Source: Octopus sinensis (lineage: Eukaryota). From it: a stretch of 44,505 nt of DNA. Positions 22,011 through 23,407 of the stretch are shown here, piece after piece. The position numbers and the translations under genes were made by a program. The stretch is from NCBI RefSeq assembly GCF_006345805.1, contig NW_021834886.1:1-44505 (forward strand), given 5' to 3'. The first letter of the stretch is position 1. Every line of letters begins with the position of its first letter. Under the pieces are notes generated by a model, which made no database searches, was not told the DNA's origin, and saw only the letters and a list, made by a program, of their open reading frames with translations.

Positions 22011-22527
22011 ATATATGATTTCGAAACGTACGTCCGTAGATAACTTAAAATTGTATGATAGATTGCCGTCAATTCATTCTCTCTTACCTGTTTGTGGCCT
22101 TCCAATTGCTGTTTTTACTGAGATCTCCCTTTTTAGTAGAAGAAATAGCTATAACCTTTTGACTGCTATTTCTAAATTCGGTATGTGGTAAGGCAATTCT
22201 TGCTAACCCTTTATTGCTTAGTATTACTTAAATTTTCCTCGAATGAGGCTTTTACATGCCGAAGACTACTTGGTGTAATTGATATTATTCCAAATTAATT
22301 AATTTCACCCTTCATTATTACGGATAACCATATTTTATCTCAGTAGATGACCACAGCATTTTGTTTTGGCTACACGCGGGTGGGAAGGGGCTGGTGACAC
22401 AATCTTTTCATTCACGCATTGAATTTGGTGATACTAGTTGCGGATTCTAGCTCGCTCTGATACTGAGTTGAGTTGGTGCCTTCTAGTATCTCAAAATTCA
22501 ATATATAATCATTTATGATTATAGTTT

Positions 22528-22622
22528 CTACGCTGAAGAGAAAAGAAGTTTGGTGAGATAGAATTATTTAATATTTAATTTATGCTTTCCTAAAAACTTG
22601 ATTTCGAAACGTACGTCCGTAG
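22528..22622 (+). ncRNA. Type I hammerhead ribozyme, perfect core, GUC cleavage triplet
   Basis: CTACG(22528)-CTGAAGA-GAAA...TTTC-GAAA(22606)-CGTACG-TC-CGTAG(22622); predicted cleavage after C22617. Confidence 0.9.
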
Positions 22623-23115
22623 ATAACTTAAAATTGTATGATAGATTGCCGTCAATTCATTCTCTCTTACCTGTTGTGTCTGCCTTCCAATTGCTGTTTT
22701 TACTGAGATCTCCCTTTTTAGTAGAAGAATAGCTATAACCTTTTGACTGCTATTTCTAAATTCGGTATGTGGTAAGGCAATTCGTTGCTAAACCCTTTAT
22801 TGCTTAGTATTACTTACATTTTCCTCGAATGAGGCTTTTACATGCCGAAGACTACTTGGTGTAATTGATAATTATTCCAAATTAATTAATTTCACCCTTC
22901 ATTATTACGGATAACCATATTTTATCTCAGTAGATGACCACAGCATTTTGTTTTGGCTACACGCGGGTGGGAAGGGGCTGGTGACACAATCTTTTCATTC
23001 ACGCATTGAATTTGGTGATACTAGTTGCGGATTCTAGCTCGCTCTGATACTGAGTTGAGTTGGTGCCTTCTAGTATCTCAAAATTCAATATATAATCATT
23101 TATGATTATAGTATT

Positions 23116-23213
23116 CTACGCTGAAGAGAAAAGAAGTTTTGGTGAGATAGAATTATTTAATATTTAATTCTTATGCTTTCCTAAAAACTTGATTTCGAAA
23201 CGTACGTCCGTAG
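23116..23213 (+). ncRNA. Type I hammerhead ribozyme, second copy
   Basis: Same core and stems as 22528-22622; predicted cleavage after C23208. Confidence 0.9.
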
Positions 23214-23407
23214 ATAACTTAAAATTGTATGATAGATTGCCGTCAATTCATTCTCTCTTACCTGTTTGTGTCTGCCTTCCATTGCTGTTTTTACTGAGAT
23301 CTCCCTTTTTAGTAGAAGAAATAGCTATAACCTTTTGACTGCTATTTCTAAATTCGGTATGTGGTAAGGCAATTCGTTGCTAAACCCTTTATTTCTTAGT
23401 ATATATA

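What the first reader, a model, noticed from the sequence alone, without database searches (positions are those of the whole stretch)
22017..23400. Candidate retrozyme: tandem ~590-nt repeats, each junction a perfect type I hammerhead ribozyme
Seen: 2.35 near-identical units whose junctions read CTACG-CTGAAGA-GAAA..TTTC-GAAA-CGTACG-TC-CGTAG (22528-22622 and 23116-23213; a half copy at 22017-22039). All conserved core bases (CUGANGA, GAAA, GUC) are present and stems I, II and III pair. No ORF is recognisable and (TA)n flanks both sides. Established: animal retrozymes and newt/schistosome satellite transcripts are non-coding tandem repeats with type I hammerheads that are processed to monomers or circles, and Penelope-like element LTRs carry related ribozymes. 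Inference: a plus-strand transcript would self-cleave after C22617 and C23208 to release a 591-nt monomer (22618-23208) that could circularise and be mobilised in trans by a Penelope-type RT. From memory, reported animal monomers are shorter (a few hundred nt) and I know of no characterised octopus family; both points need a literature check.
Basis: partly seen in the sequence, partly recalled or inferred. Interest (0 to 1): 0.95.

Follow-up and report, generated by a model that had tools for sequence, protein, structure and literature searches.

The report
Tandem repeat carrying hammerhead ribozymes
A 591-base non-coding unit repeated 2.3 times, each copy carrying a self-cleaving hammerhead ribozyme motif, is a convincing new example of the known 'retrozyme' / Penelope-associated class of animal mobile elements rather than a new kind of thing.

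Summary
Positions 22017-23400 are 2.34 head-to-tail copies (583, 591 and 192 nt, 98-100% identical) of an ORF-less, 35% GC unit bounded by (TA)n. Each junction carries a complete type I hammerhead core with predicted cleavage after C22034, C22617 and C23208. "Perfect" overstates it in three ways. Helix III is the palindrome ACGUACGU, which cannot close in cis and is predicted to form only in a two-ribozyme dimer. Helix II is a 66-69 nt hairpin. Rfam Hammerhead_1 scores 21.3 bits, below its threshold of 34.

New evidence comes from an older, 77%-identical copy just upstream (21530-21912). It keeps a hammerhead at the same position, with two fully compensatory helix I changes, and abuts an inverted 5'-truncated copy (21414-21528). 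The array and that inverted copy end at the same internal unit position against (TA)n. These are Penelope-like-element insertion signatures.

Best reading: a non-LTR retrozyme, a non-autonomous derivative of Penelope-like elements, with a dimer-type hammerhead. Cleavage, circularisation and mobilisation are inferred, not shown. No Penelope RT lies in the window.

Monomer size falls within the published range of 51-972 bp. I found no paper describing cephalopod retrozymes. Verdict: new member of a known kind, moderate interest.

The parts
21391..21415 (.). (TA)n tract that abuts the 3' end of the inverted older copy
   Evidence: TRF; sequence; junction alignment
21414..21528 (-). Inverted, 5'-truncated copy of the older subfamily 'A', covering unit positions about 81-197. 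Its 3' end reads AGTATTAT and then runs into (TA)n.
   Evidence: Self-BLASTN at 88.7% to 21707-21816 and about 80% to the main units; junction alignment
21530..21912 (+). Direct copy of the older subfamily 'A', about 77% identical to the main unit. It runs from about 20 nt upstream of its hammerhead to unit position about 290, where it ends against (TA)n.
   Evidence: BLASTN; collinear global alignment with the main unit
21550..21634 (+). Hammerhead-like motif A: UCCAUG / CUGAUGA / 54-nt helix II / GAA / ACGCGU / A / CAUGGG, with predicted cleavage after A21626. The base of helix II is imperfect.
   Evidence: Motif scan; folds; same position relative to the unit body as the main hammerhead, with two compensatory helix I pairs. 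Rfam does not report it even at E<=10.
21913..22016 (.). (TA)n tract between copy A and the main array; the presumed insertion target
   Evidence: TRF 21920-22016; sequence
22017..22040 (+). 5'-truncated start of the array: only the 3' half of a hammerhead (GAUUUC GAA ACGUACGU C / CGUAGA). It offers a substrate strand with a cleavage site after C22034 but has no catalytic core of its own.
   Evidence: Sequence; BLASTN stub; cleavage-site listing
22035..22617 (+). Unit 1 (583 nt), delimited by predicted cleavage sites
22527..22623 (+). Hammerhead B: 6-bp helix I, CUGAAGA, 66-nt helix II (4 bp, internal loop, long AU-rich extension), GAA, palindromic helix III ACGUACGU, and C17 with cleavage after C22617
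   Evidence: Rfam RF00163 at 21.3 bits, E = 0.0032, model positions 1-45
22618..23208 (+). Unit 2 (591 nt), the monomer that double cleavage would release. GC is 35% and there is no ORF.
23115..23214 (+). Hammerhead C: the same as B but with a 69-nt helix II (+U, +UC), cleavage after C23208
23209..23400 (+). Partial unit 3 (192 nt). The array's 3' end reads ...CTTAGTAT and then runs into (TA)n, at the same unit position as the 3' end of the inverted A copy.
23400..23491 (.). (TA)n tract at the 3' side of the array
   Evidence: TRF

Best explanation
The locus is a short array of a non-LTR retrozyme: a non-coding, non-autonomous retroelement of the kind derived from and mobilised by Penelope-like elements (PLEs). 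It carries a dimer-dependent type I hammerhead ribozyme.

Proposed mechanism:
1. Read-through transcription of the plus strand gives an oligomeric RNA (inferred).
2. Helices I and II fold locally. Helix III cannot close in cis, so the palindromes ACGUACGU of two hammerhead copies pair with each other. This gives a double hammerhead with swapped helix I strands. The fold is predicted; cleavage is not shown.
3. Cleavage after C22617 and C23208 releases a 591-nt RNA. Cleavage after C22034 is also possible, because the 5' stub supplies a complete substrate strand, and that would release a 583-nt RNA as well. [quoted passage not shown]
4. A host tRNA ligase (RtcB type) circularises the monomer, by analogy with coral, mussel and axolotl retrozymes.
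5. A PLE RT/GIY-YIG protein encoded elsewhere nicks AT-rich or (TA)n DNA and starts reverse transcription at a fixed internal site about 195-200 nt 3' of the cleavage site (...AGUAU/UAC). It then copies more than two unit lengths of a circular or uncleaved multimeric template. That would give the 2.34-unit array, with a defined 3' end and an arbitrary 5' end inside a hammerhead. This step is inferred from junction anatomy.
For: Shown by sequence and computation:
- The tandem units and the intact hammerhead core are at the stated coordinates.
- The motif is far above chance: 0.0087 expected per window against 5 seen.
- Rfam Hammerhead_1 aligns over its full length, below threshold, and its consensus helix III (ACGcgCGU) is the same loop-less palindrome type.
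- Minimum-free-energy folds of B, C and A form helix I plus a long helix II.
- The homodimer fold gives an 8-bp intermolecular helix III and is 12.4 kcal/mol better than two monomers. In the 688-nt dimeric transcript the two palindromes pair with each other. A and D behave the same way.
- The circular monomer folds at -155.7 kcal/mol against -118.2 +/- 5.8 for shuffles, z = -6.5, with 67% of bases paired and 35% GC.
- There is no ORF.

Evolutionary constraint:
- The 77%-identical older copy keeps a hammerhead at the collinear position. Its cleavage site lies 109 nt before body position 111.
- It has all core bases, N7 U instead of A, H17 A instead of C, and a helix III that is shorter but still palindromic (ACGCGU).
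- Two helix I pairs changed on both sides (C-G to U-A, U-A to C-G), while the surrounding sequence is too diverged for BLAST to align.

Mobilisation signature:
- Every end abuts (TA)n.
- The older element has the PLE-typical inverted 5'-truncated copy head-to-head with the direct copy (Craig et al. 2021, PMC8557442).
- The array and the inverted copy belong to different subfamilies and lie in opposite orientations, yet both end at the same unit position.
- This matches the internal initiation of reverse transcription and AT-rich target cleavage shown for the Anolis PLE PAc (PMC11167929).

Literature:
- Type I hammerheads in low-GC tandem repeats define non-LTR retrozymes (PMC7229834).
- Retrozymes group with PLE pLTRs (10.64898/2026.07.22.740005).
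- PLEs are present in octopus genomes (PMC8967140, PMC13282606).
Against: - Rfam Hammerhead_1 is below its gathering score (21.3 against 34 bits) and is not found in window-scale searches.
- Copies A and D are not reported by Rfam even at E<=10.
- The 66-69 nt helix II replaces the short helix II and loop 2 that make the tertiary contact with loop 1 in fast-cleaving type I hammerheads. PLE-type dimeric hammerheads cleave poorly in vitro (PMC4209133), so activity may be low or need a protein.
- For the Anolis PLE, hammerhead cleavage was not needed for insertion in vitro.
- No RNA data, no second locus of this family and no PLE gene could be retrieved. There is no RT/GIY-YIG ORF in the window, and no related sequence in the protein, viral or metagenome collections.
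- The shared 3' end rests on two junctions, and a third (direct copy A) ends elsewhere, at about position 290.
- The differences between units are small indels that could be long-read errors, so the age of the array is uncertain.
Confidence: 0.78

Rival explanations
1. It is not a separate non-autonomous family. It is a remnant of an autonomous Penelope-like element: a tandem of solo pLTRs, or an element that lost its RT-endonuclease ORF by deletion.
For: PLE pLTRs carry dimer-type type I hammerheads with a long helix II and a palindromic helix III (PMC4209133). PLE insertions are tandem or inverted and target (TA)n (PMC8557442). Both features are seen here. Retrozyme consensus sequences align to PLE pLTRs, so the boundary between the two is soft.
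Against: Three consecutive units and the older neighbour all lack any coding sequence. The only RT ORFs in the 44.5 kb are LINE-type, with EEP endonuclease, RVT_1 and zf-RVT domains. The older subfamily has the same ORF-less layout, which suggests the non-coding unit itself is what propagates.
Confidence: 0.12
2. It is a small satellite-type tandem duplication made at the DNA level, by replication slippage or unequal crossing-over next to microsatellites. The hammerhead would be an inherited relic with no present role in making the array.
For: There are only 2.34 copies. The region is full of microsatellites prone to slippage. Newt-type hammerhead repeats were first described as satellites.
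Against: Two diverged subfamilies lie side by side in opposite orientations and end at the same unit position against (TA)n. The head-to-head inverted truncated copy is not what slippage produces. The compensatory changes argue that the ribozyme was under selection in the lineage.
Confidence: 0.06
3. The tandem is an assembly artefact: a single copy, or a different copy number, mis-assembled between two (TA)n tracts. The ribozyme motif would still be real.
For: The units are near-identical and flanked by low-complexity DNA. The differences between units are mostly 1-3 nt indels, as long-read errors would be.
Against: The three units carry a mixed pattern of distinguishing variants, some shared by units 1 and 3 and others by units 2 and 3. 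The array starts and ends at different unit positions. Reads cannot be checked here.
Confidence: 0.03
4. The hammerhead motif is a chance match in AT-rich repetitive DNA.
For: It falls below the Rfam gathering score. Relaxed hammerhead descriptors give about 1.4 hits per random window.
Against: With the palindromic helix III the chance expectation is 0.0087 per window. The motif sits exactly at the unit junctions and is conserved, with compensatory changes, in a 77%-identical copy.
Confidence: 0.01

Closest known systems
Metazoan non-LTR retrozymes (Cervera & de la Pena 2020, PMC7229834; Li, Clavereau & Pollet 2026 preprint 10.64898/2026.07.22.740005)
   Same: Short tandem arrays of non-coding, low-GC units, each with a type I hammerhead. 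The monomer RNA is predicted to be highly self-paired. The element has no LTR, PBS or PPT, and a PLE is the presumed helper. The 591-nt unit falls within the 51-972 bp consensus range of the 2026 survey.
   Different: It is longer than the 170-400 nt invertebrate examples that were characterised experimentally. Most invertebrate retrozyme hammerheads have a stable helix III and cleave as monomers, whereas this one needs a dimer, like the amphibian ones. Helix II is 66-69 nt instead of about 4 bp plus a loop. Expression and circularity are untested.
Hammerheads in the pLTRs of Penelope-like elements (Cervera & de la Pena 2014, PMC4209133; Lunse et al. 2017 as cited in PMC7761336)
   Same: Type I topology, a palindromic helix III that only works in a dimer, a longer-than-usual helix II, and a G10.1-C11.1 pair. 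Also shared are association with tandem or inverted insertions, AT-rich or (TA)n targets, and insertion ends at an internal site downstream of the ribozyme (PMC8557442, PMC11167929).
   Different: No RT/GIY-YIG ORF lies between the repeats. Helix I is 6 bp, where min-HHRs have 4-5. The main copies have no unpaired nucleotide between A9 and G10.1. Helix II is far longer than the 7-8 bp reported.
Newt satellite 2 and axolotl retrozyme hammerheads
   Same: A tandem repeat with a weak helix III. Efficient cleavage occurs only in dimeric constructs (PMC7229834).
   Different: Those are vertebrate elements with 330-350 nt units, tens of thousands of copies, and a canonical short helix II and loop 2.
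Plant LTR retrozymes (Cervera et al. 2016, PMC4918200)
   Same: Non-autonomous elements whose hammerheads flank a 600-1000 nt non-coding RNA that circularises.
   Different: The plant elements have type III hammerheads inside true LTRs, a PBS and PPT, GC above 55%, 4-bp target site duplications, and Gypsy-type helpers.

Membership tests
Hammerhead ribozyme, type I | Conserved core C3-U4-G5-A6-N7-G8-A9 and G12-A13-A14 | tested here: met
   CUGAAGA and GAA are at the right places in both full copies and align to the Rfam consensus core.
Hammerhead ribozyme, type I | A15.1-U16.1 pair followed by H17 (not G) at the cleavage site; G10.1-C11.1 closing helix II | tested here: met
   The sequence reads A15.1...U16.1 with C17, and helix II starts with G and ends with C.
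Hammerhead ribozyme, type I | Three helices around the core, with helix I open-ended | tested here: inconclusive
   Helix I (6 bp) and helix II form in the minimum-free-energy fold. Helix III (3 bp with a 2-nt loop) cannot form in cis and is predicted only as an 8-bp intermolecular helix in a dimer. This arrangement is known for newt and PLE hammerheads.
Hammerhead ribozyme, type I | Score at or above the Rfam RF00163 gathering threshold | tested here: not met
   21.3 bits against a threshold of 34, and no hit in the whole-window or 3-kb searches. The cause is the 62-nt insertion in helix II.
Hammerhead ribozyme, type I | Mg2+-dependent site-specific self-cleavage | not testable with these tools
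   Needs in vitro transcription of monomeric and dimeric constructs.
Non-LTR retrozyme | Head-to-tail repeats, each unit with one type I hammerhead | tested here: met
Non-LTR retrozyme | No protein-coding capacity, low GC (<45%), no LTR, PBS or PPT | tested here: met
   The longest stop-free stretch is 65 codons and GC is 34.9%.
Non-LTR retrozyme | Monomer RNA predicted to be stable and highly self-paired | tested here: met
   The circular fold has z = -6.5 against dinucleotide shuffles, with 67% of bases paired.
Non-LTR retrozyme | Accumulates as linear and circular monomer RNA in tissues | not testable with these tools
   No transcriptome of the source organism could be reached.
Non-LTR retrozyme | Co-occurrence with autonomous PLEs in the same genome | not tested
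   There is none in this window. The literature reports PLEs in octopus genomes, but the source species of the window is not established.
Autonomous Penelope-like element | ORF with a telomerase-like RT and a GIY-YIG endonuclease between pLTRs | tested here: not met
   The units hold no ORF. ORFs of 90 aa or more in the window that hit Pfam are LINE-type: Exo_endo_phos, RVT_1 and zf-RVT. Short or broken PLE fragments were not searched for exhaustively.
Autonomous Penelope-like element | Insertion anatomy: partial tandems, an adjacent inverted 5'-truncated copy, microsatellite or AT-rich targets, and ends at an internal RT start site | tested here: met
   compared with PMC8557442 and PMC11167929.

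The most novel reading that the evidence does not exclude
This is an octopod-lineage retrozyme family with two distinctive properties. First, the hammerhead has replaced loop 2 by a conserved hairpin extension of about 55-70 nt, also seen in the two other hammerhead-like motifs of the window, and it is an obligate double hammerhead. Second, the insertion junctions record rolling-circle (more than two rounds) reverse transcription of a circular RNA, started by a PLE enzyme at one fixed internal site. If so, this would be genomic evidence for the long-postulated circRNA-templated transposition step of animal retrozymes.
Probability: 0.25. Interest if true: 0.55.

Novelty: new member of a known kind. 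Interest (0 to 1): 0.4.

Why it matters
Animal retrozymes and PLE hammerheads are established, but two questions remain open: what the ribozyme does in the transposition cycle, and what the RT template is (a circle or an uncleaved multimer).

This locus is a clean, young example next to an older relative, so it offers three things:
- natural covariation that supports the ribozyme;
- a clear case of a canonical 6-bp helix I and 4-bp helix II geometry combined with a very long helix II extension, which standard Rfam annotation misses, so genome surveys that rely on RF00163 will under-count such elements;
- junctions that point to a fixed internal start of reverse transcription at (TA)n targets, in line with the only biochemical study of a PLE.

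I found no published description of retrozymes in cephalopods. The giant squid genome paper only lists 235 automated Hammerhead_1 hits. Cataloguing this family would therefore fill a taxonomic gap, but it would not change the picture of how such elements work.

Tried and rejected
1. Rfam at gathering threshold on the whole window, and at E<=10 on 21000-24000. Neither gave a hammerhead, only low-complexity miRNA-like noise. The hit appears only in a 121-nt search. The same small-window search on motifs A and D gave no hammerhead hit.
2. Retrieving other copies or transcripts through spurious ORFs. An exact look-up of the 95-aa ORF and of a 423-aa LINE ORF found nothing on record. A homology search with the 57-aa stop-free translation of the unit found no candidate.
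3. DNA pattern scans. The unit-specific patterns found nothing in viral or metagenome contigs. A generic pattern (CTGANGA, 45-75 nt, CGAAACGTACGTC) returned at least 120 contigs, which on filtering were chance matches in mostly high-GC contigs. The exception was L032, which holds three compact PLE-type hammerheads unrelated to this family.
4. The one reachable octopod locus (Argonauta hians, L001, 21.5 kb) has no homologue of the unit.
5. MAFFT alignment of the four hammerheads mis-aligned helix III of copy A, so I did not build a covariance model. Pair changes were read from a pairwise global alignment instead.
6. I looked for an alternating (A-B-A) pattern among the three units that would indicate a dimeric template. 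The variants are mixed and give no clear pattern.
7. tRNA or tRNA-derived origin: ARAGORN finds nothing in the window.
8. A full-text search for the helix III/core string found no relevant paper. Lunse et al. 2017 is not held in the library.
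Full report
OBSERVATION

The stretch 22017-23400 is a real tandem repeat.
- BLASTN of 22618-23208 against the window returns 22035-22617 (98.0%), the query itself, 23209-23402 (97.9%) and a 19-nt stub at 22016-22034.
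- Cut at the predicted ribozyme sites, the array is 18 + 583 + 591 + 192 nt, which is 2.34 units.
- TRF missed it because its longest period is 500. The repeat finder shows the 583-592 nt spacing.
- The units differ by a handful of 1-3 nt indels and substitutions. Some variants are shared by units 1 and 3 and others by units 2 and 3, with no clear pattern.
- (TA)n tracts lie at 21920-22016 and 23400-23491.
- No frame has more than 65 stop-free codons.

THE RIBOZYME MOTIF

At 22527-22623 and 23115-23214 the plus strand reads:
- UCUACG (helix I, 5' strand)
- CUGAAGA (C3-A9)
- a 66- or 69-nt helix II that starts GAAA and ends UUUC (G10.1-C11.1)
- GAA (G12-A14)
- ACGUACGU (A15.1 to U16.1)
- C17
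- CGUAGA (helix I, 3' strand)

The stub at 22017-22040 holds the 3' half with a third site after C22034.

Significance: a hammerhead descriptor with at least 4 bp of helix I and a palindromic helix III of at least 6 nt is expected 0.0087 times per window (1500 first-order Markov windows). Five are present.

Rfam finds nothing at gathering threshold, and nothing in a 3-kb E<=10 search. In a 121-nt search, Hammerhead_1 (RF00163) aligns over all 45 model positions at 21.3 bits (threshold 34), E = 0.0032. The penalty comes from a 62-nt insertion in helix II. The model's own consensus helix III is the same loop-less palindrome type, ACGcgCGU.

So the core is intact, but 'perfect' is too strong.

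PREDICTED FOLDING

- The minimum-free-energy folds of the isolated motifs form helix I and a long, interrupted helix II: 4 bp, a small internal loop, then an AU-rich extension. Helix III stays open.
- With 3 bp and a 2-nt loop, helix III cannot close in cis.
- Two copies co-fold into a double hammerhead: an 8-bp intermolecular helix III and swapped helix I strands, at -43.4 kcal/mol against -31.0 for two monomers.
- In the 688-nt transcript 22527-23214 the two palindromes pair with each other.
- This is the arrangement described for newt, axolotl and PLE hammerheads, which cleave efficiently only as dimers (PMC7229834; PMC4209133).
- The geometry next to the core matches the canonical metazoan type I motif: 6-bp helix I, then 4-bp helix II, then unpaired bases. 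A long hairpin sits where loop 2 would be.
- The 591-nt monomer folded as a circle has -155.7 kcal/mol against -118.2 +/- 5.8 for dinucleotide shuffles (z = -6.5). 67% of its bases are paired and GC is 35%. Retrozyme circles are likewise described as highly self-paired.

THE NEIGHBOURHOOD ADDS THE MOST INFORMATIVE EVIDENCE

Immediately upstream, 21530-21912 is an older copy ('A') of the same element.
- It is 77% identical over unit positions 111-290 and collinear from just before the ribozyme.
- It has a hammerhead-like motif at the homologous place: UCCAUG / CUGAUGA / 54 nt / GAA / ACGCGU / A / CAUGGG, with cleavage after A21626, 109 nt before body position 111.
- The surrounding sequence is too diverged for BLAST, yet every core base is kept.
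- N7 and H17 differ within the allowed sets.
- Helix III is 2 nt shorter but still palindromic.
- Two helix I pairs have changed on both sides (C-G to U-A, U-A to C-G).
- This is natural covariation in favour of the ribozyme.
- Two caveats: the base of helix II in A is imperfect, and Rfam does not report A even at E<=10.

Head-to-head with A lies an inverted, 5'-truncated copy (21414-21528). It is 88.7% identical to A and its 3' end runs into the (TA)n at 21391-21415.

The main array ends ...CTTAGTAT then (TA)n. The inverted copy ends ...AAGTATTAT then (TA)n. This is the same unit position within 3 nt, although the two belong to different subfamilies and lie in opposite orientations. Direct copy A ends at about position 290 (ATTATT, then (TA)n).

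Partial tandems, an adjacent inverted 5'-truncated copy and (TA)n targets are the published hallmarks of PLE insertions (PMC8557442). The Anolis PLE PAc nicks AT-rich DNA and starts reverse transcription at fixed internal sites roughly 85-92 nt downstream of its hammerhead cut site (111-118 bp into the ORF, with the cut site 26 bp after the start codon), not at the RNA 3' end (PMC11167929).

The array's 5' end lies 18 nt upstream of a cleavage site, inside a hammerhead. The template was therefore not a ribozyme-trimmed linear monomer. It was either a circle copied for 2.3 rounds or an uncleaved multimer. The data do not distinguish these two.

WHAT IT IS

The best reading (0.78) is a non-LTR retrozyme: a non-autonomous, PLE-dependent retroelement with a dimer-type type I hammerhead.
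- Shown: repeat anatomy, core motif, predicted folds, covariation, junction anatomy.
- Inferred: transcription, cleavage, ligation to a circle by a host ligase (by analogy with PMC7229834), and mobilisation by a PLE enzyme.

No PLE gene is in the window. The ORFs with Pfam hits are LINE-type: Exo_endo_phos, RVT_1 and zf-RVT.

Rivals:
- a deleted PLE or solo-pLTR tandem (0.12), a soft distinction because retrozymes group with pLTRs;
- DNA-level satellite duplication (0.06);
- assembly artefact (0.03);
- chance motif (0.01).

COMPARISON WITH WHAT IS KNOWN, AND NOVELTY

The class is well described:
- PLE hammerheads in 2014 (PMC4209133);
- animal retrozymes in 2020 (PMC7229834);
- their PLE origin in a 2026 preprint, which reports consensus lengths of 51-972 bp.

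So 591 nt is not exceptional, although it exceeds the 170-400 nt of the experimentally studied invertebrate cases.

The source organism is not given. The best named relative of the LINE ORF at 40155-41495 is from the octopod Argonauta hians at 48% identity. This is compatible with an octopod but is not proof.

My literature searches found no description of cephalopod retrozymes. The giant squid genome paper lists 235 automated Hammerhead_1 hits without analysis (PMC6962438). PLEs are reported in octopus genomes.

The unusual points are the very long helix II, which hides the motif from Rfam-based annotation, and the informative junctions.

Verdict: new member of a known kind, interest 0.4.

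LIMITS

- No second locus, transcript or helper element of this family could be retrieved from any collection.
- Covariation therefore rests on one diverged copy.
- The shared 3' end rests on two junctions.

Noticed in passing
window 38430-38519 (-), with flanks 38541-39350: A third, unrelated hammerhead-like motif with the same architecture: UGCA / CUGAAGA / 63-nt helix II / GAA / palindrome ACGAUCGU / A / UGCA, with predicted cleavage after A38432. It has an A-U instead of G-C at 10.1-11.1 and only 4 bp of helix I, and Rfam does not report it. It co-folds as a double hammerhead. Just upstream is an 89%-identical inverted repeat (39318-38982 against 38878-38541). The plus-strand copy of that repeat ends in A15 at 39336-39350. 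A (TA)5 lies about 115 nt downstream of the cleavage site.
   Followed up: partly
window 190-276 (-): A weak hammerhead-like motif: UCUGCA / CUGACGA / 29 nt / GAA / palindrome AUCAUAUGAU / C / UGCGG. The base of its helix II does not pair. It is either a degenerate relic or a chance match.
   Followed up: partly
window 4185-4862: 3.6 tandem copies of a 184-nt unit at 85% matches. The consensus contains a B-box-like GAGTTCAAATTCC. From memory it resembles the abundant tRNA-derived SINE of octopuses, but ARAGORN calls no tRNA.
   Followed up: no
window 28062-34942 (-) and 40155-42026 (+): Decayed LINE-type retrotransposon copies. The minus-strand stretch holds ORF fragments with RVT_1 and zf-RVT. 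The plus-strand stretch holds a 446-aa Exo_endo_phos ORF followed by an RVT_1 fragment. The best named homologue is an Argonauta hians hypothetical protein at 48% identity. This is the only clue to the host.
   Followed up: partly
whole window, e.g. 1896-2411, 7972-8590, 42990-44298: Microsatellite load is very high: about 80 TRF rows. Examples are (AT)267, (TTA)208 and (ATGT)329. The many (TA)n tracts are potential PLE-type targets.
   Followed up: no
L032 (metagenome contig Ga0123352_10000829), about 7142, 7269 and 10822: Three compact PLE-type minimal hammerheads: an unpaired nucleotide after A9, a GGGC...GCCC helix II, and a palindromic ACAUGU or AUAUAU helix III. They lie in a 39% GC contig pulled in by the generic pattern scan. 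The contig is probably eukaryotic and is unrelated to the window's family.
   Followed up: no
L001 (Argonauta hians BAAFZT010000203.1), about 7572 (-): A compact hammerhead-like motif: GCCAU / CUGAUGA / GCG-GCAA-CGC / GAA / ACUCGGAGU / A / AUGGU. It sits 2.4 kb from the LINE ORF. A single hit of this kind is within chance expectation.
   Followed up: no
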